Virus record (IMG/VR): IMGVR_UViG_3300044797_000098
Coordinates: 310,001 to 374,000 of that record
Length of the DNA: 64,000 nt
Strand: one strand, 5' to 3'
The notes under the pieces are model-generated. The model did no database searches, was not told the DNA's origin, and saw only the letters and a list, made by a program, of their open reading frames with translations. This document shows positions 27,897 through 62,903 of this stretch, piece after piece. Positions within the stretch are counted from its first letter, which is position 1. The number at the start of each line of letters is the position of its first letter. The translations under genes and the position numbers were made by a program.

Positions 27897-28301
27897 TTAT
27901 AGCAATCGTAATCGATTTATCGATTTACTAACACTACTTTTCAACATAGGCGATAGACTTGCGCAGGTTTCAGTTCCCGGTTCGAGTTTGCCGTTATCTT
28001 TCACAACAAAAAAATTATCTTTTCCGAACTCTGCCTTTAACTCTTCCCACTCTTTTTCGGTCGCCTTCAATATAATCTTGGTCGAGCCGTTTGTCAACCA
28101 GCGCGTAGTTAGTTCCGTATGATTTATTTCGTTTTGCGGAAGACAATGTAATTTTGCGTTTATTGCAAGGGCTTTAAAATAATGAATCAACGCATACTGA
28201 ATCGAATGACCTATCTGTTCCCCAGTCTTTCCGATGCTCATATTCAGTTCTTCTCTTACAATAACATACATAACCACTGGGTCGTAATTATTTTCAGGCA
28301 T
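27897..28301 (-). CDS. Peptidyl-tRNA hydrolase 2 (Pth2) family
   Basis: MYVIVR.EL.MS.GK...Q.GH, KIILK, V.D.G...PG..T. Confidence 0.8.
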   Translation of the reverse strand: MPENNYDPVVMYVIVREELNMSIGKTGEQIGHSIQYALIHYFKALAINAKLHCLPQNEINHTELTTRWLTNGSTKIILKATEKEWEELKAEFGKDNFFVVKDNGKLEPGTETCASLSPMLKSSVSKSINRLRLL

Positions 28302-28646: not shown

Positions 28647-30293
28647 TTAATTACTCTTCTTGATCATTGCTTTACAATCAGCAAGAAAATAACCCTTCAT
28701 CTGTACAAAAATCATTTCGAAAAACCTCTCACCAGATTTGGGGAAAGATTTCATCCACGATCCTTGCAAAAACTTCTTATGCGCCTCTTCTTTTACGCTC
28801 TTTGGGTTTTTCAGGAATGTCATTAGATACTTGCGATGATATTCTTCTTTGCTAATGTATTCCATATTTTCTGCGACAATGATGTTATCCAAAAATAGTT
28901 TGGCGAACGCTGTGCCTGCGTGTCCTTTTCCGTGTCGTTTTTCAATATGTGATAGCAAGTTTATTATTCCTCCACCACCGAATGCCCTTAATTCGTCATC
29001 AATTCTTGGCTGAACCATATCGAACGGTGCTAAAATTGGCTTATCTCCACCATCCGGTTCCCACTCTTGTAAGTAAGCGTTTTCTTTTTCCCATTTATTT
29101 TTTGCAGCATAATAGCCAACACTAAGTTCTGCAACTCGTTTTTCTGCTGCTTCATATAGTTCTTTCTTTACATTGATCATATTATCGAGATCGACGCATA
29201 CTTTTTTCTTGAACTCTTCTGTTAGCGTTTTTACATTTGCTGGAATAACTTTGATCGAAGATAGGTGTTCTTTTATTTCAATAGGAAAATCAGCGTATGA
29301 TGTTTCCCCTTGTTTTAGCAATTTTCTCGAAGGCTCATCTGGTATGTAATAATCTGTTGCTTTAATTTCTTGTGTAGAAAATGTATCGAGGCCAGATTTA
29401 TCTTTTAGGACCTTCTTGAATGTTGCCATTGTATCCGTATTCATATTCGGATACATATTGTCAATCAGTAATGCTGGTTTTTTAGTGGTTCTATTAATTA
29501 CGAAACGAACCATACAACGATTGAGCATCTTGCTACCATAACCCGGAACCTCATCTTTATCGGATGATATATAAATAACTCCTACATATCTTGATGATAT
29601 TGATCCTATTAATCCTCTTGATTGAGGCGCATTCCACGCTTGACACGATACAATACCACGCATAGATATAGTTCCGATATCCCAAGCGCCTTCTTCTCCA
29701 TATGAAGAAAAATTAACCATATATTTTTTATTCGGGATATTTACACGAGAAAAGTTTTTGAACTCTTGGTATTGGTCTAATTTCATTAGATTGACGCCAA
29801 GAGGCTCTAACTCCGTCCATATTTTTCCAGCAAGACGAAGAATTGCTTCATCTTTGCGGAATGTTGGGTTTTTATCACCATTGAATACATCTGATTGTAA
29901 TCTTAAAACTACTTTACCGTCTTCTACTTTGACACAATTAGCCTGTTTCATTGTATATTGAACGGTTTGTAGCAGGCTGATCATAGATTGTATTTTACAA
30001 CACAATTCGTTTCTATTTTTTTCTGTTGATTTTAATGCTGCTTCGAGAATGGGATATAATCTGCTTTGTGCTGCATACATCTCATTAAGTATTTTATTAT
30101 TGAGACGAGTTCCTTCCGTTGTTGCCTCAGCGGTATTCATAATTGTGCAAGGCTCTCGGAAGTTTGCAAGCCCAATCTTTGGAAAGACTTTATCTATTTT
30201 AGATAGGGATTTAAATACTTCGTGGTTTTTTATCCACTCTGGGAATGGTCGTTTAGTATTAACTATGTATTCGATACCTTTTGCGTTATTCAT
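28647..30293 (-). CDS. Large uncharacterised protein, family F copy 5
   Basis: EGAWDIGTISMRGIVSCQAW core. Confidence 0.85.
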   Translation of the reverse strand: MNNAKGIEYIVNTKRPFPEWIKNHEVFKSLSKIDKVFPKIGLANFREPCTIMNTAEATTEGTRLNNKILNEMYAAQSRLYPILEAALKSTEKNRNELCCKIQSMISLLQTVQYTMKQANCVKVEDGKVVLRLQSDVFNGDKNPTFRKDEAILRLAGKIWTELEPLGVNLMKLDQYQEFKNFSRVNIPNKKYMVNFSSYGEEGAWDIGTISMRGIVSCQAWNAPQSRGLIGSISSRYVGVIYISSDKDEVPGYGSKMLNRCMVRFVINRTTKKPALLIDNMYPNMNTDTMATFKKVLKDKSGLDTFSTQEIKATDYYIPDEPSRKLLKQGETSYADFPIEIKEHLSSIKVIPANVKTLTEEFKKKVCVDLDNMINVKKELYEAAEKRVAELSVGYYAAKNKWEKENAYLQEWEPDGGDKPILAPFDMVQPRIDDELRAFGGGGIINLLSHIEKRHGKGHAGTAFAKLFLDNIIVAENMEYISKEEYHRKYLMTFLKNPKSVKEEAHKKFLQGSWMKSFPKSGERFFEMIFVQMKGYFLADCKAMIKKSN

Positions 30294-30300
30294 TTTAGCC

Positions 30301-31881
30301 TCAATTTATCACTTTCGCTAATTCGAGTTTGATGAACTCTGTCATTGTTGAATATAAAAACTCTGTGAATGTTTCCATATTGACTGTTCTCGATGTGTTT
30401 GCTGACACAATCGCTTTAACATTTGCTAATACTCTTGGGAACGCCTTTCTTCTATTCATCATAAGGTCCATTAAGTATCTTCTGTAATAAGATTTACTAT
30501 CAGTAAATCCTTTACTATCTGTTTGCGGAATGTTTGTTAACATATGTAAAACTATGTTTTCACATAACGGCGTGAATGGTGTATTCATTCGTATATTTTT
30601 AATTGTTTTTTGTATTTCATCATCAACAATAAGATTACCATCATAGATATCTTCCATCTTTTTAGCGAAAAACAATGGAAGACCTACACGAAAACTTTTA
30701 ACATTTCGTTCGATTTCCTCTTTATTATTATTGAGAAAATAAAACACATTTAGATCGTGTCGTGATTTTAGCGGTGTGTCCTGATATGACCAATCTCTAT
30801 TAGATATTTGATCTCTAATTTTTTCTGGTGGTGAATAGATATGTCTTATCTTATTACCGAGTTCTGGTGCATAATACACCGGAAGTTTTGTTCTTGATTG
30901 AAGCGATTTTGTGAAAATCGTGCATACTTCTTTATCATATTCAGGATACATTTTATCGATTAAAATACACGGTGATTTTTCATCTGCATCGATTGCATAT
31001 CTAACAACACAACGACGGATCATCTTGGTTCCAAGATTAGAATAACTTGGGTGATCTTCTGATTTAACTCCTGATGTGAGGTAAATAATACCAACGAACC
31101 TCGATAGGATCGATCCTACAAGGCAACGAGGATATTCACCATCCCATCGCTGACAAGACTTTATTCCTCGCATTGACATTGTTGCAATATCCCAAGCGCC
31201 TTCTTTTCCTTCGGAAGAGAATATAACACTATACTCTTTGTTTGGCATATTTTCTTTGCTGAAAACTTTGAACTGCGTTGTTTGTTCGAGATTTATGAAT
31301 GGTATTCCAAAAGCACCACATTTATCCTTTATTGCATTCATTATGCGCAATAATGGCTCTCCCTTACGGAAAACATTCTTGCCTTTATCATCGACAATAT
31401 CACCAATTAATTTCAATACGATTTTACCATCAGCCGAAACGACTGAACCATTTATGACATTGCCATCATACGGATCCATATATGTATGAAGTCGTTTCAT
31501 AATATCAGAAAATAAGTATAAATCATTCATTCTGATTTTATTTGTTGCTCTATCTTCTTTTGAATATAGATACTGTATAGTATCAGCCATATTAAATGAT
31601 GCGTCTCTTGCTTGGGCAACCGCATCAGCCATTATTGCCATCAGATTAAATACATAACTTCCTTCTTTTTTAACATTTTCAAAAGGCTTATCGATTATTG
31701 TTTTATCAATAAAATTAGGAAGCCCAACATTACGGAAAACTTTTTTGACCTTTGTTGGATTTTTAAATAATGTATGCTCTTTTAGAAACGGTGGAATGTT
31801 TTTATCCTTAAAAAGATCTGTTGAAAGAATAACTTTACTGTCTGTGGTTTCAGACTTTTTAATTTTTGCTTCGTCTTTCAT
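30301..31881 (-). CDS. Large uncharacterised protein, family F copy 4
   Basis: EGAWDIATMSMRGIKSCQRW core. Confidence 0.85.
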   Translation of the reverse strand: MKDEAKIKKSETTDSKVILSTDLFKDKNIPPFLKEHTLFKNPTKVKKVFRNVGLPNFIDKTIIDKPFENVKKEGSYVFNLMAIMADAVAQARDASFNMADTIQYLYSKEDRATNKIRMNDLYLFSDIMKRLHTYMDPYDGNVINGSVVSADGKIVLKLIGDIVDDKGKNVFRKGEPLLRIMNAIKDKCGAFGIPFINLEQTTQFKVFSKENMPNKEYSVIFSSEGKEGAWDIATMSMRGIKSCQRWDGEYPRCLVGSILSRFVGIIYLTSGVKSEDHPSYSNLGTKMIRRCVVRYAIDADEKSPCILIDKMYPEYDKEVCTIFTKSLQSRTKLPVYYAPELGNKIRHIYSPPEKIRDQISNRDWSYQDTPLKSRHDLNVFYFLNNNKEEIERNVKSFRVGLPLFFAKKMEDIYDGNLIVDDEIQKTIKNIRMNTPFTPLCENIVLHMLTNIPQTDSKGFTDSKSYYRRYLMDLMMNRRKAFPRVLANVKAIVSANTSRTVNMETFTEFLYSTMTEFIKLELAKVIN

Positions 31882-31904
31882 TTGTCAAGTTTCTCCGATT
31901 ACTA

Positions 31905-33452
31905 CTATATTTTAGCCACTGTTTGATCGTTAGTCAAGTCGTTAGATTTATTAGTTAATAACTCTTTTAATTGCAATTTTATACCAGTCGATATTTGGTT
32001 ATGAGCTGGTTCAAGCAGTTTAGTAAGAATTGCAGAATTAATTCTTTCGTTTTTATTTAAATTGAAGTATTTGTTTATACGCTTAACAAAAGATTGTATA
32101 ACTTTTTTGTTATATTTTTTTGATAGAAAAGAAAAACATAACTGTTTATAGTAATCTGATGAACTATCGAATGTATTTTTGGATACTTCTTTTATTATCG
32201 TATCAGCAATAGAATTAAAATACTCGTCAGTCAGATATTTCATATCATTACAAACAATTATTTTTTGCAATGATTTTTTAATCTTATCGTTTTTTGATAT
32301 GCAAGATATATCTGAATTAAAACTAATTGGTTTGGAATGAGATCTAATTGCATTACGAAGTCTGGTTTCTCTATTTTTTAGATTTGTTTTGAGAGGTGGT
32401 TCTTTAATAGGCAATTTTGTAGCAACCATAGTATCCATATATGATTTTGTGCGTTCTGGAAGACTTTCTCTAATTTTATTAGGTGGAAGATATAGATTTT
32501 TAATCTGGATATAAGTATTATTATACGGATAGGCTACGACTCGTATTTTGTTATTTGTTTTATTTTCTATGAATGCCCTGAATGATTCCATCACTTTACC
32601 ATCATATTCAGGATACATTTTATCAATGAGAATAATCGGTTTTTGAGTTTGAGAATCAATTGTATATCTAACAACTGACCTTCTTATCATTTTTGATCCA
32701 AGACCATCAACATCTTTTCCTGATGTTAAATATATTATACCAACACAAGGATCAATAAGTGAGCCAACTAATTGTGTCTTAAATCTTCCACCCCAACTTT
32801 GACAAGACTTTATTCCACGCATAGACATTGTTGCAATGTCCCATAACCCTTCATTGCCATTTGATGAAAAAACTATTTGATAGTTTTTCATTGGAACATT
32901 ATCGGTGCTAAATCGTTTAAAATCTTTCATTTCTTCGAGTTTTGGAAGCACTTTACCTATGTGCAATGATTTAATTTCATTATATATTTTATTATATACT
33001 TTAAATATGCTTTCGTTTTCTCTGAAAACAATTTTGCCTTGTTGATCGAGAACATCATATGTCAATTTTATCGTTATTTTACCATCATCTGATGTTTTAA
33101 CAAAACTGGATATGTTATAGGTATCTGGCATTCTTTCAACAACATATCTCCAATAATTAAGTCTATTGATTTTTTCGATTGTTTTAGGGTTTTTATTATG
33201 ATTTTTATTTTCTAAAACATACGACTTGGCTCTAATCTTATTAGAAAGAATATAATATATTGACCAAAATAAATTATTACCAGCCTCTTTTGCAATGTCA
33301 GAATTGTCGAACTTACAAGTTTCGGAACAATTAAATAATCCTATTGATGGAAAAACTTTACTTACTTTTGTCAATGATGTAAGTTTTTTATGACTTACAA
33401 GAAACTTCGGAAGTTTTTCATTTTTTAGAAACTCTTGAATGTTAGTCCGCAT
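31905..33452 (-). CDS. Large uncharacterised protein, family F copy 3
   Basis: EGLWDIATMSMRGIKSCQSW core. Confidence 0.85.
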   Translation of the reverse strand: MRTNIQEFLKNEKLPKFLVSHKKLTSLTKVSKVFPSIGLFNCSETCKFDNSDIAKEAGNNLFWSIYYILSNKIRAKSYVLENKNHNKNPKTIEKINRLNYWRYVVERMPDTYNISSFVKTSDDGKITIKLTYDVLDQQGKIVFRENESIFKVYNKIYNEIKSLHIGKVLPKLEEMKDFKRFSTDNVPMKNYQIVFSSNGNEGLWDIATMSMRGIKSCQSWGGRFKTQLVGSLIDPCVGIIYLTSGKDVDGLGSKMIRRSVVRYTIDSQTQKPIILIDKMYPEYDGKVMESFRAFIENKTNNKIRVVAYPYNNTYIQIKNLYLPPNKIRESLPERTKSYMDTMVATKLPIKEPPLKTNLKNRETRLRNAIRSHSKPISFNSDISCISKNDKIKKSLQKIIVCNDMKYLTDEYFNSIADTIIKEVSKNTFDSSSDYYKQLCFSFLSKKYNKKVIQSFVKRINKYFNLNKNERINSAILTKLLEPAHNQISTGIKLQLKELLTNKSNDLTNDQTVAKI

Positions 33453-33460
33453 ATTATGAC

Positions 33461-35053
33461 CTATGGAAGTGGCAAGGGTTCGATTTTCATTTCGTTTCTT
33501 TTATCAACTACTTTTTTCAACTCTTCTTTTATTTCTTTTTCCATCAATGGGAAAACACTTTGCATCAATGGCACGAAGTTTCTTATACCGAAACGATGTC
33601 CTGCTTTTAGATACAACTCACCGTTTAGTTTTTTAATCAGTTCATTCTTTGACGAATGAATGGCTTTATTTCTATGATTGAAAAAACTATAATATACACG
33701 ACGAATATAAGTATCAGAATTAGTAAATTGTGTCTTATCAACATTATCAATTATTTGTTTGGCAAGACTACTACCGATAGCATTCAATGTATGATCATAT
33801 GAATAGTATCTATTTTTATTTGGAAGAATAAGCAATTTCATTGCTGGCTTTATTGTTCTTGGAACTTTTTCTATATCTATTTTTTTAATAGCATCAACAA
33901 ATGCTTTTGAAAAGATTTTTATGAACTTATTCTCTTTTTTCCTGCTATTTTTGTCGAATAAGACTGCTTGTTTGTCTTTTTTATTGCCAGATTGATTTTT
34001 AATTTTACAATCCTGATATGACTGAATCGATTCATATTCATCATACGGACGAGATTTACCTTCCCTGCTGGTGTCTTTTAGTTTCTTTCTAATTGGATTT
34101 AGTGGAAGATATGACTCTTGTAATAATTTGTAATCCATATTTTCAGCATAAAAAACATCGAACTTGTTATTGGTTTTTGTTTCTATAAACTTTTTAAATT
34201 GAGCAATAACTTTATTATCGCCCGATGGATACATTCTGTCGATTAGAATATACGGTTTATGGTTTTTACCATCAATAACGAACCTAACAACGCATCGCCG
34301 AACCATTTTACTACCATATTCATTAAACTTACCATTGGTCGTCATATAAATTATGCCAACGAATGGATCTATGACTGAACCTATTGTGCAATACTTGTAT
34401 TCTCCTCTATCCCAACTTTGGCAGGAAGATATACCACGCATTGACATAGTGCCAATATCCCAAGCACCTTCTGCACCATCGGATGAAAATACTATTTTGA
34501 ACCCATTATTCGGAATGTTGTCCGTGCTAAATGCTTTAAACGAATAAGCGTTCTCCAACGGATCTAATCCAGCAACATTTGCCTCTTGAAGCATTTCGCT
34601 TAATTTATTATATACTCGGAATAGACTTTCATTCTTTCTGAAAACTGGTCTATTATCGCCTTCTATTGTTATGTTGTCGGATAGTTTTAATGAAACTCGA
34701 CCGTTATTAACTTGAATAATATCGTTGGATTTTTTTAATTGATTGAAAACTGCTTGAAGCAGGGTGGAACAATTTTCTGTTTTTTCTTTATTGACTTTGT
34801 TTTTTATTGTCTTTTTATGCCTATTAAGTAATGTAATGCTGTATGATATTATAGCATTAATATCACCAATCAAAATACCAGCAGATTGCTTTGCTTGATC
34901 TATATTATCTACATTCGCATCCTCAATACAATTAGGAAGTCCTATTGACGGAAAGACTTTTTTGATCGTCTTTACTTCCTTGAAAATGGGATGAGACGAA
35001 AACCATTTAGGATATTTTTTGTCTTTAAAGATTTCTTTTATTGGTGTTGCCAT
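33461..35053 (-). CDS. Large uncharacterised protein, family F copy 2
   Basis: EGAWDIGTMSMRGISSCQSW core. Confidence 0.85.
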   Translation of the reverse strand: MATPIKEIFKDKKYPKWFSSHPIFKEVKTIKKVFPSIGLPNCIEDANVDNIDQAKQSAGILIGDINAIISYSITLLNRHKKTIKNKVNKEKTENCSTLLQAVFNQLKKSNDIIQVNNGRVSLKLSDNITIEGDNRPVFRKNESLFRVYNKLSEMLQEANVAGLDPLENAYSFKAFSTDNIPNNGFKIVFSSDGAEGAWDIGTMSMRGISSCQSWDRGEYKYCTIGSVIDPFVGIIYMTTNGKFNEYGSKMVRRCVVRFVIDGKNHKPYILIDRMYPSGDNKVIAQFKKFIETKTNNKFDVFYAENMDYKLLQESYLPLNPIRKKLKDTSREGKSRPYDEYESIQSYQDCKIKNQSGNKKDKQAVLFDKNSRKKENKFIKIFSKAFVDAIKKIDIEKVPRTIKPAMKLLILPNKNRYYSYDHTLNAIGSSLAKQIIDNVDKTQFTNSDTYIRRVYYSFFNHRNKAIHSSKNELIKKLNGELYLKAGHRFGIRNFVPLMQSVFPLMEKEIKEELKKVVDKRNEMKIEPLPLP

Positions 35054-35060
35054 TATGATC

Positions 35061-36464
35061 TCATAGGTATTTAGAATAGATTTTTGCGTATTTTGACTTC
35101 GGTGATTTCGGTTTCTTTGAAAGTTTTGCTAACTCTTTATTTATAATTGGAATTACTTTCTTTGATGCTTCTGATACGATTTTTTTTCTTATATTTTCAG
35201 TCTTTTTTGAAGGTGAAAAAAAACCATACCATACATCACTCATATGGTTGTTTATGGCTTTCTTTACATCTTCCACATCAGATTTAAATTCTGGTTTGGT
35301 TATATACCGCGGATTATCATTCCACAATCTTAAATCATCTAAAACATTAACATAATCGACATCTTTATTTTTTACATCTCTAATAACATTTTTATATTCT
35401 TCGGGAACATCTGCGAGTTTTAATTTTTTCACACACGATATAAAACTTTTTGCTACTGCATTATCAATTCGATCTGATATTTTTTCCAATTCTCTACCGG
35501 TCCTATCATCATAAGTTTCATCATCAGTTTCATCATCATAATCGATCTCATTATCGCGATATGATCTGCAATCGTAATCTAAATTGCTAACTACTTCGCT
35601 TGTCGGTATAACAACATTGGAACGCAACCCATTTTTTAAATCGATTATATCGAACTTGTTTTTAGTTTTTTCTTTTAGAAAAGTAATGAACTCTTTCATT
35701 ACGGCTTTATTATATTCAGGATACATAGTATCTATAACAATGCTTGGTTCTTTGCTTCGTTCTTTTACAACGAACCTAACAATACATCGACGAAGCATCT
35801 TGCTACCATAATCTGTTTTTGTGCCAGAGGTTAGATATATAATACCAGTGAATGGATCGACAATTGATCCGACTAATTTACCACAATACTCCTTACCCCA
35901 GCCCTGACACGAAGATATACCACGCATTGACATCGTAGCAATATCCCATAGTCCTTCCATACCATCGGAAGAAAAACGAACTGTATGTTTAGCGTTTGGT
36001 ATATTTATTGAACTGAATTGCTTAAAAGCACTAATGTTTTCTAACGCTGGAAGATATGATTGGTATTGTTTATGTAATTTATTATATACTTTGAATACAC
36101 CCTCGCCTTGTTTGAACACAATTTTTTTATCTTTATCCGCAATAGGTTTTGTGAGATTGAGGGATATTTTACCATCTTTTTTTACAACCGATTTAACAAG
36201 AGTATTAGATAGATTGCTTATCAATGTATAGTCTTGTTTATAAATAGGAATATAATTATGTAATGCACAACTCATATTTTCAACTAAATTTAACGCAGTT
36301 TCCTTTATTTCTTCTGTGTTATCTATGCTTACAACTTTTTCACAATTAGGAAGTCCAATATCTGGGAAGATTTTCCTTACAACTTTTACTGTTTTGAATA
36401 TAGGATGTTGTCTTATGAAGACAGGAAAATCTTTTTTAGCGAATATCTGTTTTACTGTTGGCAT
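35061..36464 (-). CDS. Large uncharacterised protein, family F copy 1
   Basis: EGLWDIATMSMRGISSCQGW core. Confidence 0.85.
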   Translation of the reverse strand: MPTVKQIFAKKDFPVFIRQHPIFKTVKVVRKIFPDIGLPNCEKVVSIDNTEEIKETALNLVENMSCALHNYIPIYKQDYTLISNLSNTLVKSVVKKDGKISLNLTKPIADKDKKIVFKQGEGVFKVYNKLHKQYQSYLPALENISAFKQFSSINIPNAKHTVRFSSDGMEGLWDIATMSMRGISSCQGWGKEYCGKLVGSIVDPFTGIIYLTSGTKTDYGSKMLRRCIVRFVVKERSKEPSIVIDTMYPEYNKAVMKEFITFLKEKTKNKFDIIDLKNGLRSNVVIPTSEVVSNLDYDCRSYRDNEIDYDDETDDETYDDRTGRELEKISDRIDNAVAKSFISCVKKLKLADVPEEYKNVIRDVKNKDVDYVNVLDDLRLWNDNPRYITKPEFKSDVEDVKKAINNHMSDVWYGFFSPSKKTENIRKKIVSEASKKVIPIINKELAKLSKKPKSPKSKYAKIYSKYL

Positions 36465-36680: not shown

Positions 36681-37044
36681 GAAACTCTAAATCATTAAAT
36701 TTCAATAGTAATTCTCGTGTGCGAGACAATCTTGAATTATTCGCTTTGGTTTTTATTTTTTCTTCTATTTTTGTGCGCAATGCTATGTATGCTCTATCAA
36801 TCCAAGGCTGTTCCAATTTTATTCCACCGATATACACATTTGGAAACTTTGATTGTGGCTGTCCGCCAGTTCCCGAATAACTCATAAATCCAGATCGTAA
36901 TAATCTAAAAACTTTTTCTGGTCTGTAATCGCTAACGACTATTTGTTCAGGTATCTTTAAATTGTATGATGGAATTACGAATGAATACTCATTACAATAA
37001 GCCATCATTTTCATTAATTGATCCATTGTTGGCTGTGATATCAT
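36661..37044 (-). CDS. Hypothetical protein
   Basis: Tiling ORF. Confidence 0.6.
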   Translation of the reverse strand: MISQPTMDQLMKMMAYCNEYSFVIPSYNLKIPEQIVVSDYRPEKVFRLLRSGFMSYSGTGGQPQSKFPNVYIGGIKLEQPWIDRAYIALRTKIEEKIKTKANNSRLSRTRELLLKFNDLEFLVNKTS

Positions 37045-37205
37045 TTGATTAATCCAATATGTTTGAACAATTCAACATTAAATTCACCGAATGTTTTTCC
37101 TTTAATAAGGATATCTGGTTCTAACCAACGCACAATGCCTTCATCACTTTCAACTATCGTTCCCGTATATGATTTTGGTGTAAAAACTTTAACGTTCCTA
37201 TCCAT
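37041..37205 (-). CDS. 54-aa hypothetical protein (not in track)
   Basis: MDRNVKVF...IGLIK; fills the gap with ATGA coupling. Confidence 0.55.
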   Translation of the reverse strand: MDRNVKVFTPKSYTGTIVESDEGIVRWLEPDILIKGKTFGEFNVELFKHIGLIK

Positions 37206-37207
37206 AT

Positions 37208-37582
37208 TCATACCAGCGTTAAATACTTTGCTAAGTTTTCTTTGCCATATATTTTCTTGTTATCGAGAGCCTTTATATGTTTGCCATCGATATAGTATTC
37301 TGTTGTTTTGCCATGGTTTCTAATAATTGCCGGACCATCATCACGATGATTGACATATCCGGATGCCACATATTTATTGTATGTTTTTATTCCATGAGAA
37401 TACTCATTAGCATAACCATCTGGTGTTCTCCAACTTTTCGAGATACCATAACCATCTTTTCTATAAGATATGAAAAAATTAGGTAATTTTATTTCTGAGT
37501 TAATTCCGAATCGATCGGCAAGTTTATATATTTGAAACTGCGTTTCTAATACTACATATTTTATATATTCAATAGCGATCAT
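37208..37582 (-). CDS. HRxDGPA-motif protein, tag AKYLTLV
   Basis: NHRDDGPAII..EYYIDGK. Confidence 0.7.
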   Translation of the reverse strand: MIAIEYIKYVVLETQFQIYKLADRFGINSEIKLPNFFISYRKDGYGISKSWRTPDGYANEYSHGIKTYNKYVASGYVNHRDDGPAIIRNHGKTTEYYIDGKHIKALDNKKIYGKENLAKYLTLV

Positions 37583-37585
37583 AAA

Positions 37586-38575
37586 TCAATTCTCTTTACA
37601 CACATTCACATAAAAAACATTACCATCAATTTCAATCTTTTTTGCATCCTTAGGATCATCATTATATGACATCAGTGCAATTTCATTCGCGAGCAGTTCT
37701 TTTTTCAACTTATCTTTATACTTTACGATGACATTAGCGGGTTTTGGCATACAAAAGATTTCGATATATACTCGATCTGTCAATTCCAATTCGAGTTCTT
37801 TACGCACATTTTGCAATGCAGACTTAAAATCAGCAATAAATCCTCTTTCCAATAACTCATCGTTCAAGTTAGTATCAAGAATGATTACCCCTGATTTATT
37901 CGATGAGGAAGCATAACCCGCTTTTGATACGAACTCAACTTCAATATCTGCTAATGTTAGATCAATATCGCACATTCTAACTGCTTCTTTGTTTTCGAGC
38001 AGTTTATACAAGTCTTTACGATCAGCAAAACTCATCTTTGCCAGTTCAATTTTCAACGCATTACCTTGCTTGCCTCGTCCAGTTTTGCCAAGATTTCTAA
38101 AATTAGGCTTCAATACCATATCGGTGAATTGATTTGTGTCTTCGACGAATACAACTTTATCAACATTTAATTCATCGCCAAGCACATTAGCGTAATCGTT
38201 GTTCTTGCAATCAACATACACCATATAATTTTGCACTTGTTTATCTGCGAATAACACATATGCTGTGCTCAATGGTTGTCGATTACGGATTTTAACTTCC
38301 GCACGAACCTTATGTCCCATCTCGCACATATCACGAATTGACCGCATACGATAGATTAGTTCGTAATCGATATCACCAACTGGTGATTTATTTACACTAA
38401 CGATAGCGAAGTTCGGATCGTTTTGATATTCCGCCTGATATTCTTTGATCAACTGATCTGATTTATCATCAATGGAATTGAACGAGGCGAATGCAGTCCA
38501 TTGCTGAACAACACCTTCATCATTTGTGGAATTATAGCGAATTGTGTATTCACGCACGGTTTTTGTTTCCCTCAA
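37586..38575 (-). CDS. Stand-alone C-terminal part of a type-2 isoleucyl-tRNA synthetase (DUF5915-like); no catalytic core
   Basis: ID.EL..RM..IR.....G..VR....IRNRQPL and LDT.L..EL...G...DF..ALQ..RKE..LE.TDR; no HIGH/KMSKS. Confidence 0.75.
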   Translation of the reverse strand: MRETKTVREYTIRYNSTNDEGVVQQWTAFASFNSIDDKSDQLIKEYQAEYQNDPNFAIVSVNKSPVGDIDYELIYRMRSIRDMCEMGHKVRAEVKIRNRQPLSTAYVLFADKQVQNYMVYVDCKNNDYANVLGDELNVDKVVFVEDTNQFTDMVLKPNFRNLGKTGRGKQGNALKIELAKMSFADRKDLYKLLENKEAVRMCDIDLTLADIEVEFVSKAGYASSSNKSGVIILDTNLNDELLERGFIADFKSALQNVRKELELELTDRVYIEIFCMPKPANVIVKYKDKLKKELLANEIALMSYNDDPKDAKKIEIDGNVFYVNVCKEN

Positions 38576-38798: not shown

Positions 38799-39277
38799 TA
38801 CAAAATCGCCTTGCTAAATTGTTTATAGTCTTTATATTGTTTAGTAATCCTATTCCAAAATCCCCACGAATTATTTTTTCTACTACCAGTGAAAAACAAT
38901 GTCCAAGGCCCATTATTTTCATCAATAAGTTCAACGCGATGAAAATCATTGTGTGTGAAAAAATTGAATGACAATGGCTTTACAAAACGACGAGTGATTG
39001 TATCATCGGGATTGCGTCGTTCTTCCCAATAACCTTGCGTCAATACGAAACTGAATGCCCACTTTGCAGGATGATGATGCAACAAGTATGTTTTTCCACC
39101 AACACCATCATTAGGATCAGTATCTAAATCGCTACTTCGGAAGTGGTGTAAAAATAGGTTTCCCAACTCTCTATCTTTCAATAATAGGTAATATCTTGTT
39201 AGATACGGATTGCCATCTGGTTTTGGAATTGTGATATTTGGGATATGTTCAATCAACGAACGAAGAATAGTAAGCAT
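38798..39277 (-). CDS. Cupin-fold phage protein
   Basis: LHHF..SD...HHHP..W..SFVL..GYWE...HRVEL...WTLFFTG; GGAG RBS. Confidence 0.65.
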   Translation of the reverse strand: MLTILRSLIEHIPNITIPKPDGNPYLTRYYLLLKDRELGNLFLHHFRSSDLDTDPNDGVGGKTYLLHHHPAKWAFSFVLTQGYWEERRNPDDTITRRFVKPLSFNFFTHNDFHRVELIDENNGPWTLFFTGSRKNNSWGFWNRITKQYKDYKQFSKAIL

Positions 39278-39297
39278 TGTTCTCTCCTAAAAATTGC

Positions 39298-39501
39298 GGG
39301 AATGACCACACTTTTGTGGTTTGGCATTTAACTTTGTCCAGTTTTCACTCTTATGAATAACGCTTTGCTATTCACCGCTTCGGGCACATTCAGCAGCGAG
39401 TGAAAGGGATTTAGTTTATTGCTTGCGGGCACGCCTCTGATGATTGGTTAGATTATCTTTCAACTTTGGACATTTACTTTAAATCTAAAAAATCCATTCC
39501 C
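39298..39501 (-). ncRNA. Candidate ~204-nt structured ncRNA (tmRNA-like topology, non-canonical)
   Basis: No ORF; predicted start site coincides with 5' GGGAATG, which pairs with 3' CATTCCC; several internal stems. Confidence 0.55.
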
Positions 39502-39508
39502 TGTTAAT

Positions 39509-39537
39509 ATTGTAAGCACTAACCCGACACCCGTCAA
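39509..39537 (-). promoter_or_regulatory. Sigma70-type promoter for the candidate ncRNA
   Basis: TTGACG-17 bp-TACAAT. Confidence 0.8.
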
Positions 39538-40037
39538 GGGGCTTTTGACTTTTTGTCCTTATTAGAAACAACTCTTGGCATTTCAACACCGAAGATAGTT
39601 CGATATATATTTGCCAAGCAAGTTTCCGAGCATGCAACTCTATTCGGTAAGTCCTGCGTTTCATATGCCTTGTTCATATTGCCAATGGGTTTTTGGCAAC
39701 TACAACATTTGGCCATACTTTTGAATGTTGATTGTGCCCATCGTTCAAGTTTTTCGAGGTCTTTTTTATTATGTGGACCGAAGTATGTTTTCGTTCCTTT
39801 ACCGTCGTGATTGACAAGTGATATGAGTTTTCGTTCATCCCAATATGAATTATTCCACTCATCTAAAATACGAATAGCAACATTTACTGCATCGATAGGA
39901 CTTAATAGATTTTTTTGTTCCCCCAAAAACTTTGCAGGAAGTATGTCTTTACCAGCATATTTTTTACCACCACAAGATATTTCAACAACTAATTGATTAT
40001 CTTCGTAATATCGTTGGCGACTCGTAAAAAAAGACAA
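39534..40037 (-). CDS. Hypothetical protein with C-terminal Zn finger
   Basis: GGAGGT RBS before TTG at 40037; CCSC...CSETC. Confidence 0.6.
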   Translation of the reverse strand: MSFFTSRQRYYEDNQLVVEISCGGKKYAGKDILPAKFLGEQKNLLSPIDAVNVAIRILDEWNNSYWDERKLISLVNHDGKGTKTYFGPHNKKDLEKLERWAQSTFKSMAKCCSCQKPIGNMNKAYETQDLPNRVACSETCLANIYRTIFGVEMPRVVSNKDKKSKAP

Positions 40038-40106
40038 AATACACCTCCAAAAAATTATCTTTGTCGATATATACATATAACCACATATGAATATATGGAG
40101 ACAAAA

Positions 40107-40949
40107 ATGACAAGAAAACAAAGATCGGATACGATTATTTTAGACAAAAACCAATTACAAAATGACTATAATGAATTAAAAAGTGTAAGGAAGGTTGGTA
40201 AAAAATACGGTATTTCTCGTGAAACGGTAAGAAAATATATACATTTATATAATCTTAATTATATTAAACCAATTAAATATAATTGTAATGAAAATTTTTT
40301 CAATGAAGAAACTGAATCTGCATATTATTTTGCTGGATTTTTAGCAGCCGATGGCTGCCTATTTAAGAAAAAAGGAGAAAGTTATGAAGTCAAACTCACA
40401 CTGAAAGACACCGACAAAGATATTTTATTTAAATTTAAACAATCAATTAATTCTGATGCACCAGTAATTGAGACGAAAAGATTGTGTAGAGTTTTTACTA
40501 GATATTTCAATATAACAACAGCGCAATTTAGAATTGCATCTAAAATTGTGTTCAATAATCTAAAACAAAAGTTTCAATTAACTCCTCGTAAATCATTAAC
40601 TCTTAAATTTCCGATAAAACTAAAAAACAACGAGTTAATTAGACATTTCATTCGTGGTTATTTCGATGGTGATGGGTCGATTTATATCAATCATACAGAT
40701 AAAAAAAGTGGTATAAAACATATGCGAATTAGTATTGTAGGAACAAAACATATGTTGGAAAACATTAGATATGTATTAATGCGTGAATGCATAATAAAAA
40801 AGGGAACAATTATAAAAATTAATAATATTTATGAACTTCGATATGGCGGTAATAATATTGTGTATGCTATATATAAATATTTATATAAAGATGCTACATT
40901 ATTTCTTGAACGAAAAAAACTTAAATTTGAATATATCTCACCAAGATAG
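40107..40949 (+). CDS. LAGLIDADG homing endonuclease with N-terminal HTH
   Basis: AYYFAGFLAADGC and HFIRGYFDGDGSI; GGAG RBS before ATG 40107. Confidence 0.9.
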   Translation: MTRKQRSDTIILDKNQLQNDYNELKSVRKVGKKYGISRETVRKYIHLYNLNYIKPIKYNCNENFFNEETESAYYFAGFLAADGCLFKKKGESYEVKLTLKDTDKDILFKFKQSINSDAPVIETKRLCRVFTRYFNITTAQFRIASKIVFNNLKQKFQLTPRKSLTLKFPIKLKNNELIRHFIRGYFDGDGSIYINHTDKKSGIKHMRISIVGTKHMLENIRYVLMRECIIKKGTIIKINNIYELRYGGNNIVYAIYKYLYKDATLFLERKKLKFEYISPR

Positions 40950-48350: not shown

Positions 48351-49051
48351 TATGGTTTCGTGCTAACCTTTTTGATTGGTTTCATTTTCTTTGTTGGGGT
48401 TGGAACTGGATTTGCTGGCATTGGAACTGGAACTGTTTTTGTTCCACTGCCACCAATATATTGTCCTGATCCTGCTGGCGGTGTAGCAGAAATACTTTGC
48501 GTTGGTTTAGTTGTTTTCAATGTTTTCAGTTGATTTACCGCATTCTTCATCTTCTCTTCGAGCGTTTTCTTTGCTTCCTTTTTCACTGTTGGCTTGGAAG
48601 ATAGATCAATTTTCTTCGGTGTATAACCGATGCTCTTATACATATCTTCTCTTGGGAACCTATAATACTTTACGTTATCTTGTTCTGCGTTTTCTGGTTG
48701 TGATATATTATCACGCACCCGAATGATTGCGTTTCCATTCTTTACATCTTTACCAATTAGCCACACTGCTTTTTGCAGCACATAATCTTTGCCCGGTGCG
48801 CTGTGATCGAATGTGCTTGGCATATCCCACATAGCATCAATCTCTGCGAGGACAATAAAAACATCCGTTGGATCAAGTGATTTAGCAATGTTTTCCATAT
48901 CGGTTAAATTTAAATCACCAGCACCAATTCGCTCGCCCGCACCATTATACCAGCCAGCATTTTTTATTATGCTGTTCCAGCGCATTTGGTTATTAGATAG
49001 ACCGAATGCTTTGCATTTGAGATCGCCGAACATTGATTTTGTGAGTTTCAT
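48350..49051 (-). CDS. Hypothetical protein with Lys/Pro/Thr-rich tail
   Basis: ATGA-coupled to gltX. Confidence 0.7.
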   Translation of the reverse strand: MKLTKSMFGDLKCKAFGLSNNQMRWNSIIKNAGWYNGAGERIGAGDLNLTDMENIAKSLDPTDVFIVLAEIDAMWDMPSTFDHSAPGKDYVLQKAVWLIGKDVKNGNAIIRVRDNISQPENAEQDNVKYYRFPREDMYKSIGYTPKKIDLSSKPTVKKEAKKTLEEKMKNAVNQLKTLKTTKPTQSISATPPAGSGQYIGGSGTKTVPVPMPANPVPTPTKKMKPIKKVSTKP

Positions 49052-50735: not shown

Positions 50736-51545
50736 ATGAGCCATTATGTATATATATTGCAAAATAAAATTAACTTGAAGATTTATGTCGGATATTCCGC
50801 AAATCCAAAAATAAGATGGAATAGTCATAAAAACACCGCGAATAACCCAAAACATAAAAATCATCACGAACTAATATATAATGCAATACGCAAACACGGT
50901 TGGGAAAATTTTGACAAACAAATTATTGAAGAATGGGAAACTAAAAAAGAAGCGCTAGAAGCAGAGATGTTTTGGATAGAATTTTTTCGAACCAATATTC
51001 ATATTTATGGAAAAGAATATGGGTATAATCTTGGCCCAGGTGGAACTGGCGGTCGCGTAAAAGGTGGAAAACTTTCTATTGAACATAGGCGCAAATTAAG
51101 TGAAGCGCATAAAGGAAGAACCGCGTGGAATAAAGGGAAACCGTCCCCACTAAAAGGTCGAAAAAGAACAACACCGCTTACTGAAAATGAAAAACAAAAC
51201 CTTGCAAGACTTGCTGATTTTCATAGAGGTAGAAAACATTCACCAGAACGAATAGAAAAATCAAGACAATCACGCTTAGGAAAGAAAACAAAACCACATA
51301 CGGAAGAACATAAGCGCAAAATAAGTGAGGCTCAAAAAGGAAAAAAGAAACCAAAACACATATTTTCAGAAATAATTGAAAAACAAATTGTTCAAGAATA
51401 TAAATCTGGTAAATCTATAAATAAATTAAAAATTGAATATAAATGTAGTTGGACTGCAATCAAATCAATATTACTTATGTATATAGCGGAAAACGATATA
51501 AGAAAAGATGATGGTAAAAAAACGAGAAAAATTATTCGAAAATAA
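50736..51545 (+). CDS. GIY-YIG homing endonuclease with NUMOD3 repeats
   Basis: YVYILQN..N.KIYVG, GYN, HRRKLSEAHKG repeats. Confidence 0.9.
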   Translation: MSHYVYILQNKINLKIYVGYSANPKIRWNSHKNTANNPKHKNHHELIYNAIRKHGWENFDKQIIEEWETKKEALEAEMFWIEFFRTNIHIYGKEYGYNLGPGGTGGRVKGGKLSIEHRRKLSEAHKGRTAWNKGKPSPLKGRKRTTPLTENEKQNLARLADFHRGRKHSPERIEKSRQSRLGKKTKPHTEEHKRKISEAQKGKKKPKHIFSEIIEKQIVQEYKSGKSINKLKIEYKCSWTAIKSILLMYIAENDIRKDDGKKTRKIIRK

Positions 51546-62381: not shown

Positions 62382-62762
62382 CTAAAATCTAAAATAGGTA
62401 TCAGTGTTGTTATGCGGATACCAACAACCATACTCATTGGGGCTGATAGAATAGAATACTTTCTTTACTCGTTTTGCTTTTAGTGCATTGGCACAATCGG
62501 GACAAGGACGAGCAATAGCAAGCGAATTATCACGGCGAAGTATTCTAACTACATAAAAGGTTCCGTTAAAATCCACTTTTTTCAGCGTCCTGTATTCGGC
62601 GTGGGCTTTACGATCTGGTTCTGCCACTGGCGAATTGGGAGCACCAACAAGCACGCCGTCATTTCTCACACATAGGGCACCTACTTTGAACGAGCGTTTA
62701 TCGTCTTTGGAAAGAGCAATTTTTACTGCCAGATCAAAATAGTAATGAACGGAATTGCGCAT
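62382..62762 (-). CDS. Cytidine/deoxycytidylate deaminase-like protein
   Basis: KVGAL..., HAE and RPCPDC zinc motifs; start uncertain. Confidence 0.85.
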   Translation of the reverse strand: MRNSVHYYFDLAVKIALSKDDKRSFKVGALCVRNDGVLVGAPNSPVAEPDRKAHAEYRTLKKVDFNGTFYVVRILRRDNSLAIARPCPDCANALKAKRVKKVFYSISPNEYGCWYPHNNTDTYFRF

Positions 62763-62830
62763 CAGGGATAGGTAAGGCTCGGACGCTGGTTTGTCAAGTC
62801 CAGTCAAAAAACTCAATGATATCAAGGCAG

Positions 62831-62903
62831 TCGGCGTGGTAGGGGTCGAACCTACTAATCGAAGAATATAAGTCTTCTGTCTTAACCGTTTGACGACACG
62901 CCG
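62831..62903 (-). tRNA. tRNA-Ile (anticodon UAU)
   Basis: Acceptor CGGCGTG/CACGCCG+A; D stem GTC/GAC; anticodon stem GAAGA/TCTTC with loop CT-TAT-AT; T arm GTAGG-TTCGACC-CCTAC; CCA not encoded. Confidence 0.9.

What the first reader, a model, noticed from the sequence alone, without database searches (positions are those of the whole stretch)
37586..38575. IleRS C-terminal module without the synthetase core
Seen: after about 65 unrelated residues, the protein follows type-2 IleRS from the last anticodon-domain helix (…R…IRNRQPL) through the DUF5915-like end. There is no HIGH, KMSKS or editing domain, yet the ORF is intact and coupled to its neighbours. Inference: a repurposed tRNA-binding protein. 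It could act in trans with host IleRS, protect tRNA, or act as a decoy. The same window encodes the unusual tRNA-Ile(UAU).
Basis: partly seen in the sequence, partly recalled or inferred. Interest (0 to 1): 0.65.

Follow-up and report, generated by a model that had tools for sequence, protein, structure and literature searches.

The report
Phage stand-alone IleRS tRNA-clamp protein
A 406-kb peat phage carries a conserved, enzyme-less copy of only the tRNA-gripping tail of isoleucyl-tRNA synthetase, apparently an undescribed kind of stand-alone tRNA(Ile)-binding protein that travels with the phage's own unusual tRNA-Ile(UAU).

Summary
Window 37586-38557 (-) encodes a 323-aa protein (329 aa from the upstream TTG). 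It matches Pfam DUF5915 (E 7e-31). Its model superposes on the type-2 IleRS C-terminal domains ARD2 + INS + ARD3 (Z 19.8 to PmIleRS2). A new acidic domain of about 60 aa precedes them.

No class-I catalytic core, editing domain or ARD1 exists anywhere in the 406-kb phage genome.

It is not decay:
- At least 35 stand-alone relatives (33-86% identity) form one clade, many on 150-470-kb phage contigs in conserved synteny.
- dN/dS is 0.13.
- The residues shown experimentally to read wobble base 34 (Pm Q961/R964/K965/L969) and to touch the D-loop/elbow (K862/F865) are near-invariant.

The Arg reader accepts G34 or U34, not C34.

All four module-bearing phage records or contigs that I could check for it carry tRNA-Ile(UAU). 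One 485-kb control phage lacks both.

Best reading: a catalytically inert, trans-acting tRNA(Ile) elbow and wobble-base clamp tied to TilS-independent AUA decoding. tRNA binding, and how the clamp helps (charging aid, shield or enzyme-targeting subunit), are untested.

I found no description of it in the literature I searched: a new variant of the free-standing synthetase-domain proteins.

The parts
37586..38557 (-). Gene for the stand-alone IleRS2 C-terminal module. It is 323 aa from the GTG at 38557; the longest ORF runs to a TTG at 38575 (329 aa). The stop is at 37586-37588.
   Evidence: ORF and translation. Public gene call P0002 is 323 aa starting VREYT. DUF5915 at E 6.8e-31. Overlap with the upstream stop and a 3-nt gap to the next gene.
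38372..38557 (-). N-terminal domain (residues 7-68 of P0001). It has a beta-beta-alpha-beta fold, is acidic, is specific to the family, and has no detectable homologue.
   Evidence: Conserved across the family: alignments A1 and A2. pLDDT about 87-90. Best fold matches reach only Z <= 5.7. hhalign against the rest of the protein is negative. Median net charge is -4. In the structural alignment to PmIleRS2, model residues 41-68 lie over Pm 747-786, the end of ARD1.
38129..38371 (-). ARD2 / C-ter A, first part (residues 69-149). It contains the helix with R91 and the KIRNRQPL motif.
   Evidence: Alignment to Pm 787 onwards and to yeast 816 onwards. R91, R99, Q100, P101 and L102 are conserved in both the family and cellular IleRS2. 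Yeast Arg838 is structurally essential: PMC11685878.
37922..38128 (-). INS / C-ter B subdomain (residues ~150-218), the elbow/D-loop clamp. It carries the LKPNFRxLGxKGxGK motif (K156, F159).
   Evidence: The secondary structure (three short helices, a hairpin and a two-stranded sheet) fits the published description of C-ter B. K156 aligns with Pm K862 and F159 with Pm F865. They are kept in 34/35 and 32/35 family members.
37868..37921 (-). ARD2 / C-ter A, second part (residues 219-236), after the INS insertion.
   Evidence: Model strands 221-226 and 229-234. Structural alignment to 8c8w and 8wnd.
37589..37867 (-). ARD3 / C-ter C (residues 237-329), the wobble-base (N34) reader: Q255, R258, K259, L263.
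   Evidence: These residues align with Pm Q961, R964, K965 and L969. Family conservation is 32/35, 33/35, 28 K + 5 R, and 31/35. R964A and yeast R999A abolish aminoacylation. The Arg reads the carbonyl of G, I, U or Psi34. The cellular Arg (Pm R954, 97% conserved) is Ala248 in the family.
62830..62903 (-). tRNA-Ile(UAU), the candidate client. The link is inferred, not shown. It has a GGUUA D-loop and A73.
   Evidence: ARAGORN and Rfam. It co-occurs with the module in G000, G001, G002 and the 298-kb contig of L008/L128. A 485-kb control phage lacks both the module and tRNA-Ile(UAU).

Best explanation
The gene encodes a catalytically inert, free-standing tRNA clamp derived from a type-2 isoleucyl-tRNA synthetase. 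It keeps exactly the three C-terminal domains that, in the enzyme, hold the tRNA(Ile) elbow/D-loop (INS/C-ter B inserted in ARD2/C-ter A) and flip out and read wobble base 34 (ARD3/C-ter C).

The Arg258 side chain would hydrogen-bond the carbonyl of G34 or U34 (or the imine of lysidine) and reject C34. The helical domain that reads A35/U36 and the whole catalytic and editing body are gone. A small acidic, family-specific domain sits where ARD1 used to pack.

The protein therefore cannot charge tRNA. I infer that it binds tRNA(Ile)-type tRNAs in trans. Its most likely job is to support the phage's own TilS-independent AUA decoding through tRNA-Ile(UAU). AUA is as frequent as AUU in this genome, and Ile(UAU) is one of its only two tRNAs. 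The protein would act as a handling or specificity factor for that tRNA, for example presenting it to the host IleRS or another partner, or stabilising it.

Shown here: domain identity, absence of the core, purifying selection, a single origin, conservation of the contact residues, and co-occurrence with the tRNA. Inferred: tRNA binding. Speculative: the downstream benefit.
For: Identity and anatomy:
- DUF5915 at E 6.8e-31.
- AF2 model with pLDDT 88.5.
- Foldseek E 1e-18 and VIA Z 19.8 to PmIleRS2 747-1032; Z 15.5 to the tRNA-bound yeast IleRS 816-1072.

No core:
- No PF00133 in G000, G001 or G002.
- tblastn finds no remnant of the rest of IleRS.

Selection and family:
- 30 stand-alone relatives of 247-416 aa by word search.
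- A search of 1.84 billion representative proteins shows a separate tier of family clusters that match from profile position 1-3. The next hits are fragments of ordinary IleRS2 that carry Anticodon_1 and tRNA-synt_1.
- The family is monophyletic with support 1.0.
- dN/dS is 0.13 against the 82%-identical relative.
- Synteny is conserved across five phage loci.

tRNA contacts:
- The published functional residues are Pm K862/F865 (D-loop) and Q961/R964/K965/L969 (G34 pocket); R964A is dead.
- Yeast Arg999 reads the G/I/U/Psi34 carbonyl, and deleting C-ter B is lethal to charging.
- These map to K156/F159 and Q255/R258/K259/L263, which are kept in 28-34 of 35 family members.

Link to AUA decoding:
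- ATA is used at 33.2 per 1000 codons against ATT at 34.0.
- The genome's only tRNAs are Lys(UUU) and Ile(UAU).
- tRNA-Ile(UAU) is present in all four module-bearing records checked.
- The 485-kb control phage LR745208 has 35 typed tRNAs including Ile(GAU), but neither Ile(UAU) nor the module.
- A type-1 (Trp-reader) IleRS charges tRNA-Ile(UAU) poorly; an Arg or Lys reader is what enables it (PMC3575796).

Capacity for full synthetases:
- The same phage carries a complete GluRS. Keeping only the IleRS tail is therefore not a general inability to carry whole synthetases.
Against: - No binding data exist, and no RNA-protein modelling tool was available.
- Without ARD1, the positively charged anticodon cavity (normally formed by ABD, C-ter A and C-ter C) lacks one wall. 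Affinity and A35/U36 specificity may therefore be low.
- The protein is net acidic (about -8) and the added domain is acidic.
- In a complex with a host IleRS, the module would compete for the same tRNA surface as the enzyme's own C-terminal domains. A simple 'helper' mechanism is hard to draw.
- The most distant family members (P0054, P0057) have changed the Q/R pocket while keeping the INS motif.
- The co-occurrence data amount to about two independent lineages plus one negative control.
- The host and its IleRS type are unknown.
Confidence: 0.5

Rival explanations
1. Anticodon-loop shield or decoy. The module sequesters N34 and the elbow of tRNA(Ile), host or phage, and so protects it from a host tRNA-targeting defence or toxin such as an anticodon nuclease or a tRNA-modifying toxin. 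Alternatively it soaks up such an effector.
For: - The module keeps exactly the parts that bury the flipped-out wobble base and hold the elbow.
- The genome's two tRNAs include Lys(UUU). That tRNA is a classic anticodon-nuclease target; this is my own knowledge and was not tested here.
- Relatives have tRNA genes, an RNA ligase, an RF-1-domain protein and PTH2 in the same block, and G000 has RNA-ligase and PTH2 homologues.
Against: - I did not identify a tRNA(Ile)-specific defence nuclease here.
- There are no PADLOC hits for the protein or its neighbours.
- Stoichiometric shielding would compete with charging and with the ribosome.
- The idea does not explain the association with UAU rather than GAU.
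Confidence: 0.18
2. Targeting subunit of a tRNA-modifying or tRNA-processing enzyme. The module supplies elbow and N34 recognition, and a partner docks where ARD1 was (perhaps on the acidic N-domain) and acts on the anticodon loop. The candidate partner is the CDA-fold deaminase that sits directly after tRNA-Ile(UAU).
For: - The half-open anticodon cavity and a new protein-like (acidic) N-domain sit at the former ARD1 position.
- The deaminase has invariant HAE and PCxxC motifs.
- It is adjacent to tRNA-Ile(tat) in G000, G001, G002, L126 and L128.
- Module, tRNA and deaminase co-occur in all four module-bearing records.
Against: - The deaminase family is far wider than the module family: more than 335 proteins, and it is present in LR745208, which lacks the module.
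- The genes are 17-37 kb apart.
- The deaminase could be an ordinary nucleotide deaminase.
- The wobble base cannot sit in both the ARD3 pocket and a deaminase active site.
Confidence: 0.1
3. Competitive inhibitor. The module titrates host tRNA(Ile), or blocks its access to host IleRS or TilS, to depress host translation or to trigger or avoid a starvation response.
For: A dominant-negative tRNA-binding fragment is the simplest activity of an enzyme-less anticodon reader. The conserved G34-type pocket is shown.
Against: The phage is itself Ile-rich in AUU, AUC and AUA and encodes no tRNA-Ile(GAU). It would starve its own translation.
Confidence: 0.07
4. The fold has been co-opted for a ligand other than tRNA(Ile), such as another RNA, a tRNA-like mRNA element or a protein. 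The conserved residues would then be structural.
For: - Yeast Arg838 and Arg999 also stabilise loops.
- The distant members P0054 and P0057 changed the pocket residues.
- The protein is acidic overall.
Against: Both separate tRNA-contact patches (INS K/F and ARD3 Q/R/K/L) are retained together across 33-86% identity. These include side chains with no obvious structural role.
Confidence: 0.12
5. A decaying remnant of a once full-length phage IleRS with no function.
For: Phages of this clade do carry whole synthetases (GluRS; a class-II aaRS in L130).
Against: - dN/dS is 0.13.
- At least 35 intact members share the same architecture and a shared new N-domain.
- The family is monophyletic.
- No core remnant exists.
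- Gene packing is tight.
Confidence: 0.02

Closest known systems
C-terminal domains of type-2 IleRS: ARD2 + INS + ARD3 of P. megaterium IleRS2 (8C8V/8C8W), equivalent to C-ter A/B/C of yeast IleRS (8WND)
   Same: Homologous in sequence and fold. The order of subdomains is the same. The Arg/Gln/Lys/Leu wobble-base pocket and the Lys/Phe D-loop contacts are the same.
   Different: The phage protein is free-standing. It has no HUP catalytic domain, CP/editing domain or ARD1. A new acidic N-domain takes the place of ARD1. The conserved cellular Arg (Pm R954) is Ala, and KV becomes RN in the K(I/V)R(N/V)RQPL motif. It is encoded by jumbo phages.
Free-standing synthetase-derived tRNA-binding domains (PylSn, Trbp111/CsaA, Arc1p). 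These are cited from my own knowledge and were not tested here.
   Same: They are non-catalytic tRNA-binding modules that also occur fused to a synthetase, are encoded as separate proteins and act in trans.
   Different: Their origins and folds differ (PylRS N-domain; OB-fold of the MetRS C-terminus). None derives from IleRS and none reads the wobble base. The aaRS-paralogue review that I searched lists only IleRS2 and SbzA under IleRS (PMC9437257).
Arg/Lys wobble reader of IleRS in Mycoplasma species that use tRNA-Ile(UAU) (M. mobile Arg865)
   Same: A basic side chain at the N34 reader is what allows the UAU anticodon to be accepted. The phage module carries an invariant Arg reader and co-occurs with tRNA-Ile(UAU).
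   Different: In M. mobile the change is a point substitution inside the Zn-binding domain of a full type-1 enzyme, not a separate protein.
GluQRS/YadB, a truncated GluRS
   Same: It is a naturally truncated synthetase paralogue that was kept for a new tRNA-directed role (cited in PMC9437257).
   Different: It is the mirror image: the catalytic domain is kept and the anticodon-binding domain is lost, and it remains an enzyme.

Membership tests
Pfam PF19302 (DUF5915) | HMM score above the gathering cut-off (27 bits) | tested here: met
   107.8 bits, E 6.8e-31, profile positions 3-194 of 195. 109.1 bits in the genome search.
Isoleucyl-tRNA synthetase (class Ia aaRS) | Rossmann/HUP catalytic domain with HIGH and KMSKS (PF00133) | tested here: not met
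   The protein has no PF00133 hit at E <= 1. The whole genome has none, nor do G001 and G002. tblastn with full-length IleRS2 hits only the C-terminal part.
Isoleucyl-tRNA synthetase (class Ia aaRS) | CP1 editing domain | tested here: not met
   The protein is 323-329 aa. Alignments to IleRS start at Pm 787 and yeast 816. tblastn finds no other IleRS segment in the genome.
Isoleucyl-tRNA synthetase (class Ia aaRS) | Helical anticodon-binding domain ARD1 (PF08264), which reads A35/U36 | tested here: not met
   P0001 has no Anticodon_1 hit, whereas fragments of true IleRS2 show it. Residues 7-68 are unrelated by sequence and by fold.
Type-2 IleRS C-terminal organisation (ARD2 + INS + ARD3) | Three subdomains in order, with INS inserted in ARD2 and ARD3 in place of a Zn-binding domain | tested here: met
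   Z 19.8 over 258 residues to 8c8w, and Z 15.5 to 8wnd_A. The INS secondary structure matches the published C-ter B description.
Type-2 IleRS C-terminal organisation (ARD2 + INS + ARD3) | Arg side-chain reader of N34, with its Gln/Lys/Leu pocket | tested here: met
   R258, Q255, K259 and L263 align to Pm R964, Q961, K965 and L969. They are kept in 33, 32, 33 (K or R) and 31 of 35 family members.
Free-standing, trans-acting tRNA-binding synthetase domains (functional kind) | A separate gene without a catalytic core, maintained by selection | tested here: met
Free-standing, trans-acting tRNA-binding synthetase domains (functional kind) | Demonstrated tRNA binding and an effect in trans | not testable with these tools
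   This needs EMSA, ITC, RIP and aminoacylation assays. No RNA-protein predictor was on hand.

The most novel reading that the evidence does not exclude
The module is a phage-encoded, detachable 'wobble-base identity reader'. It lets a phage run its own TilS-independent AUA-decoding tRNA-Ile(UAU) in a host whose IleRS or modification enzymes would otherwise handle it badly. It would do so either by docking on a host synthetase in trans or by guiding a phage enzyme (possibly the deaminase linked to tRNA-Ile(UAU)) to the anticodon loop. That would be a new class of viral tRNA-identity adaptor.
Probability: 0.13. Interest if true: 0.85.

Novelty: new variant of a known kind. Interest (0 to 1): 0.6.

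Why it matters
Two 2024-2026 structural studies defined how the type-2 IleRS tail reads the wobble base and grips the tRNA elbow. Here nature has cut out exactly that tail and kept it under selection as a separate phage protein.

If it binds tRNA(Ile), it would be:
- the first stand-alone IleRS-derived tRNA-binding protein that I could find;
- a natural minimal system for studying N34 recognition uncoupled from catalysis;
- a new way for jumbo phages to manage a single decoding problem, AUA versus AUG.

It could also serve as a compact protein reagent that tells G34/U34 from C34 in tRNA.

Tried and rejected
- **GenBank 'phages', megablast of the locus:** no match.
- **tblastn of the protein against 'phages':** the hits MT835536 and MT835484 are full-length IleRS genes of 1052 and 1036 aa flanked by bacterial housekeeping genes. 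They are probably bacterial contigs and are not relatives of the module.
- **PHROGs:** nothing for the protein. **PADLOC:** nothing for it or its neighbours.
- **N-domain:**
  - hhalign against ARD2 and ARD3 was negative.
  - The wide PDB fold search gave Z <= 5.7, generic alpha/beta matches.
  - Atlas feature scores were below 0.8.
- **Complex prediction, module plus the deaminase linked to tRNA-Ile:** no verdict (score 0.00). This counts neither for nor against binding.
- **blastn of the tRNA-Ile(UAU) against 'phages':** no match.
- **My recollection that T4 tRNA-Ile is UAU was wrong.** The gene reads CAT.
- **Whole-record searches of the ENA/JGI contigs behind L008, L010 and L011:** Co-occurrence there could be checked only piecemeal.
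- **RNA evidence:** a metatranscriptome run holds only small contigs at 39128-39464, not the gene itself. It shows nothing about expression of the gene.
- **Promoter and terminator scan:** counts no higher than in shuffled sequence.
- **Host identification:** not achieved. The Myxococcota sister position in the tree rests on a pattern-biased sample, and I expect those bacteria to be far more GC-rich than this 35.6% GC phage (own knowledge; their GC was not measured here).
Full report
**Setting.** The window is bases 310001-374000 of a 406,470-bp IMG/VR virus record (35.6% GC, CheckV completeness 95%). The only public runs that hold the locus are peat metagenomes. Genes lie almost entirely on one strand. 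It is a jumbo phage.

**The observation.**
- The ORF at 37586-38575 (-) is open for 329 codons from a TTG.
- Pfam DUF5915 matches residues 131-327 at E 6.8e-31.
- phmmer against PDB sequences aligns residues 72-301 with P. megaterium IleRS2 residues 787-1007 (E 6e-15), and more weakly with yeast and human IleRS.
- NCBIfam hits only the C-terminal ~220 positions of the MupA and MupB (IleRS2) models, far below their cut-offs.
- The first ~65 residues hit nothing.
- The whole genome has no class-I catalytic core (PF00133). tblastn with two complete IleRS2 proteins finds only this ORF's tail.
- The likely start is the GTG at 38557, giving 323 aa. That equals the public gene call, and relatives begin M(R/K)EYT.
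- That GTG overlaps the upstream ORF's stop (GTGCGTGA). The downstream ATG follows 3 nt after the stop.

**Anatomy.**
- An AlphaFold2 model built on 24 family sequences is confident (pLDDT 88.5, pTM 0.69).
- Foldseek puts PmIleRS2 first (E 1e-18).
- VIA-align gives Z 19.8 over 258 residues (model 41-329 on Pm 747-1032) and Z 15.5 to the tRNA-bound yeast IleRS (model 69-328 on 816-1072).
- Two recent papers define these domains as ARD2 with an inserted INS plus ARD3 (PMC13752280), equivalent to C-ter A, B and C (PMC11685878).
- With yeast 816 aligned to model residue 69, phage R91 corresponds to the structural Arg838 of C-ter A. Homology therefore begins at the first helix of ARD2, not inside the helical anticodon domain, and ARD1 is entirely missing.
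- My domain map, in P0001 numbering:

| Domain | Residues |
|---|---|
| N-domain | 7-68 |
| ARD2, first part | 69-149 |
| INS | ~150-218 |
| ARD2, second part | 219-236 |
| ARD3 | 237-329 |

- INS has three short helices, a hairpin and a two-stranded sheet, as described for C-ter B.
- The N-domain has a beta-beta-alpha-beta fold and is consistently acidic, with a median charge of -4.
- It has no sequence relation to ARD2 or ARD3 and no significant fold match (Z <= 5.7).
- In the superposition, its second half lies where the end of ARD1 lies in PmIleRS2.

**Not decay.**
- A word-based search limited to proteins of similar length found 30 stand-alone relatives of 247-416 aa at 38-100% identity. 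All carry DUF5915 only. Several lie on contigs of 196-471 kb.
- An exhaustive profile search of 1.84 billion representatives shows a top tier of clusters that match the profile from position 1-3, so they include the N-domain.
- The next hits match only from position ~60. Ten proteins from these lower tiers were scanned:
  - six carry Anticodon_1, three of them with tRNA-synt_1 as well, so they are fragments of ordinary IleRS2;
  - one (P0046) shows DUF5915 alone;
  - P0054 and P0056, both family members, also show DUF5915 alone.
- The two best of these hits, P0043 and P0044, sit in cellular contexts.
- IMG/VR holds two more records with the module:
  - G001 (157 kb), at 82% identity;
  - G002 (433 kb), whose 327-aa homologue at 33% identity has the same architecture.
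- Neither has a PF00133 core.
- In a tree of the C-terminal region (35 family members and 68 cellular IleRS2 tails), the family is one clade with support 1.0. Its sister is Myxococcota IleRS2, but the cellular sample was drawn by motif and is biased.
- dN/dS against the 82% relative is 0.13.
- Synteny holds across five loci: FEN exonuclease, a ~165-aa protein, a cupin-like 159-aa protein, variable small genes, the module, variable genes, a 127-aa protein, a 70-aa protein, then an array of ~500-aa paralogues.

**What is conserved.**
- Counting along the alignment, the PmIleRS2 residues shown by mutagenesis to matter map as follows:
  - K862 and F865 (INS, near D-loop U20/U21) map to K156 and F159.
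  - Q961, R964, K965 and L969 (the ARD3 pocket for G34; R964A is inactive) map to Q255, R258, K259 and L263.
- Across 35 family members these residues are K in 34, F in 32, Q in 32, R in 33, K or R in 33, and L in 31. They are equally conserved in the cellular tails.
- In yeast the equivalent Arg999 donates hydrogen bonds to the carbonyl of G34, I34, U34 or Psi34 and cannot read C34. Deleting C-ter B abolishes charging and weakens binding.
- Family-specific changes exist:
  - The cellular Arg at Pm 954, 97% conserved and by helical periodicity probably on the same helix face as the pocket, is Ala248.
  - The junction motif K-V-R-Q-P-L becomes R-N-R-Q-P-L.
- The two most distant members, P0054 and P0057, have altered the Q/R pocket but kept the INS motif.
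- My inference is that the protein still binds a tRNA by its elbow and wobble base. Its chemical preference would be G34 or U34 over C34. It has lost the A35/U36 reader and one wall of the basic anticodon cavity.

**Link to tRNA-Ile(UAU).**
- The genome has only two tRNAs, Lys(UUU) and Ile(UAU).
- In a crude gene set, ATA is used at 33.2 per 1000 codons against ATT at 34.0 and ATC at 12.9.
- All four module-bearing records or contigs that could be checked for the tRNA carry tRNA-Ile(tat):
  - G000;
  - G001;
  - G002, with two copies plus Ile(gat) among its 41 tRNA matches;
  - the 298-kb contig that holds both L008 and L128.
- All the phage tRNA-Ile(UAU) genes have the GGUUA D-loop. From my own knowledge, this matches E. 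coli tRNA-Ile.
- As a control, the 485-kb uncultured phage LR745208 has no match to the family profile. Its 35 typed tRNAs include Ile(gat) and a CAT species but no Ile(tat).
- T4's tRNA-Ile gene is CAT, which corrects my own recollection.
- Three of the four positives are one lineage, so this amounts to about two independent co-occurrences and one concordant absence. That is suggestive only.
- The literature gives a rationale. E. coli-type IleRS, with a Trp reader, charges tRNA-Ile(UAU) poorly, and an Arg or Lys reader is what confers UAU acceptance. The type-2 Arg reader accepts U34.
- How a detached reader could help a host enzyme is unclear, because it would occupy the same tRNA surface.

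**Alternatives.**
- A shield or decoy against tRNA-directed defences is plausible. The translation and RNA-repair flavour of the neighbourhood in relatives fits it: tRNA genes flanking the module in L011, an RF-1-domain protein, an RNA ligase and PTH2. Nothing specific supports it, and PADLOC is blank.
- A role as a targeting subunit is suggested by a side finding.
  - A CDA-fold deaminase with invariant HAE and PCxxC motifs lies directly after tRNA-Ile(tat) in G000, G001, G002, L126 and L128.
  - Against it, the deaminase family is much broader than the module family and is present in the module-less control.
  - The complex prediction gave no verdict.
- A host-translation inhibitor is unlikely, because the phage depends on AUU and AUC decoding and encodes no tRNA-Ile(GAU).
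- Decay is effectively excluded.

**Comparison and novelty.**
- The protein is a member of DUF5915 and of the type-2 IleRS C-terminal organisation. It fails every other defining feature of an IleRS.
- In kind, it resembles the free-standing synthetase-derived tRNA-binding proteins PylSn, Trbp111 and Arc1p. That comparison is from my own knowledge.
- Searching full text for 'DUF5915' returned no paper.
- The 2026 study of IleRS C-terminal evolution mentions no phage or stand-alone form.
- A review of synthetase paralogues lists only IleRS2 and SbzA for IleRS.
- JGI annotates several members simply as 'isoleucyl-tRNA synthetase', which is misleading.
- I rate it a new variant of a known kind.

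**Limits.**
- No binding or activity could be tested.
- The host is unknown.
- The whole contigs behind the ENA and JGI loci could not be searched.
- The reads tools showed presence in peat DNA runs but nothing about transcription of the gene itself.
- No alternative genetic code was used.

Noticed in passing
window 62382-62825 (-); also L016 1025-1456 (-), L021 1881-2252 (+), L126 4001-4405, L128 2501-2941: A ~125-147-aa CDA-fold zinc deaminase lies directly downstream of tRNA-Ile(tat) in five phage loci, including the distant G002.
- It has invariant HAE and PCxxC motifs.
- Pfam dCMP_cyt_deam_1 matches at E 8e-11.
- The TadA model scores only 32 bits against a cut-off of 150.
- The family has more than 335 members, many on 380-470-kb contigs.
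- It is usually followed by a class I/II aminotransferase.
Whether it acts on the tRNA or on nucleotides is unknown.
   Followed up: partly
window 49048-50475 (-): A complete bacterial-type glutamyl-tRNA synthetase (TIGR00464, 444 bits against a cut-off of 290; tRNA-synt_1c plus Anticodon_2). It is conserved in the relative L008 (55% identity). The phage therefore keeps one whole synthetase alongside the IleRS tail.
   Followed up: partly
window 27945-28301 (-): A PTH2-type peptidyl-tRNA hydrolase (E 6e-13), with a DNA ligase homologue just beyond it. An RNA-ligase homologue lies outside the window at genome 282807-283445.
   Followed up: no
window 28647-36464 (-): An array of five paralogous ~470-550-aa proteins with a shared ...SSDG.EG.WDI.TMSMRGISSCQ... 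motif. Pfam and PHROGs give no match for the two that were scanned. The array is conserved downstream of the module in all close relatives.
   Followed up: no
window 37041-37211 (-): This 56-aa ORF matches only the C-terminal part (residues 72-126) of a 121-126-aa NUDIX protein that sits beside the module in relatives (L006 9326-9691, L010 11023-11403). It looks truncated in this genome. The 124-aa ORF at 37208-37582 lies where the NUDIX N-terminus would be.
   Followed up: partly
window 39993-40949 (+) and 50736-51545 (+): Two homing-endonuclease genes lie on the opposite strand: a LAGLIDADG type with an HTH, and a GIY-YIG type with NUMOD3. The first is inserted between the FEN exonuclease and the conserved ~165-aa gene, a junction that is contiguous in the relatives L006 and L008. 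The genome also has four TnpB-like copies.
   Followed up: no
window 39128-39537: The only contigs from an RNA library that lie on the 4-kb stretch cover the start of the 159-aa cupin-like gene and 187 nt of the 256-nt intergenic region upstream. One ends in adapter sequence at 39464. The best sigma-70-like match (TTGACG, 17 nt, TACAAT) is at 39537-39509 (-). This may be the promoter and leader of the operon that contains the module, but it is not evidence of transcription.
   Followed up: partly
G002 (IMGVR_UViG_3300010403_000705): L034 1501-1574, L021 1501-1593: The distant 433-kb relative has 41 tRNA matches. They include a CUA-anticodon (amber suppressor or 'Pyl') tRNA and a 93-nt tRNA-Ile(tat) with a long extra segment. 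Recoding of TAG or an intron is possible.
   Followed up: no
L001 (MT835536.1) and L002 (MT835484.1): These GenBank 'Bacteriophage sp.' records carry full-length IleRS genes flanked by glycogen phosphorylase, a methyltransferase, a pseudouridine synthase and an acyl-CoA ligase. They look like bacterial contigs filed as phage.
   Followed up: partly
L046, L050, L091, L096, L119 (Minicystis rosea CP016211), L123: In several Myxococcota genomes, the open frame around the IleRS2 C-terminus is only 480-860 aa. In L123 the IleRS is split into 493-aa and 680-aa ORFs beside two carrier-protein genes. These could be frameshifts, true splits or assembly errors.
   Followed up: no
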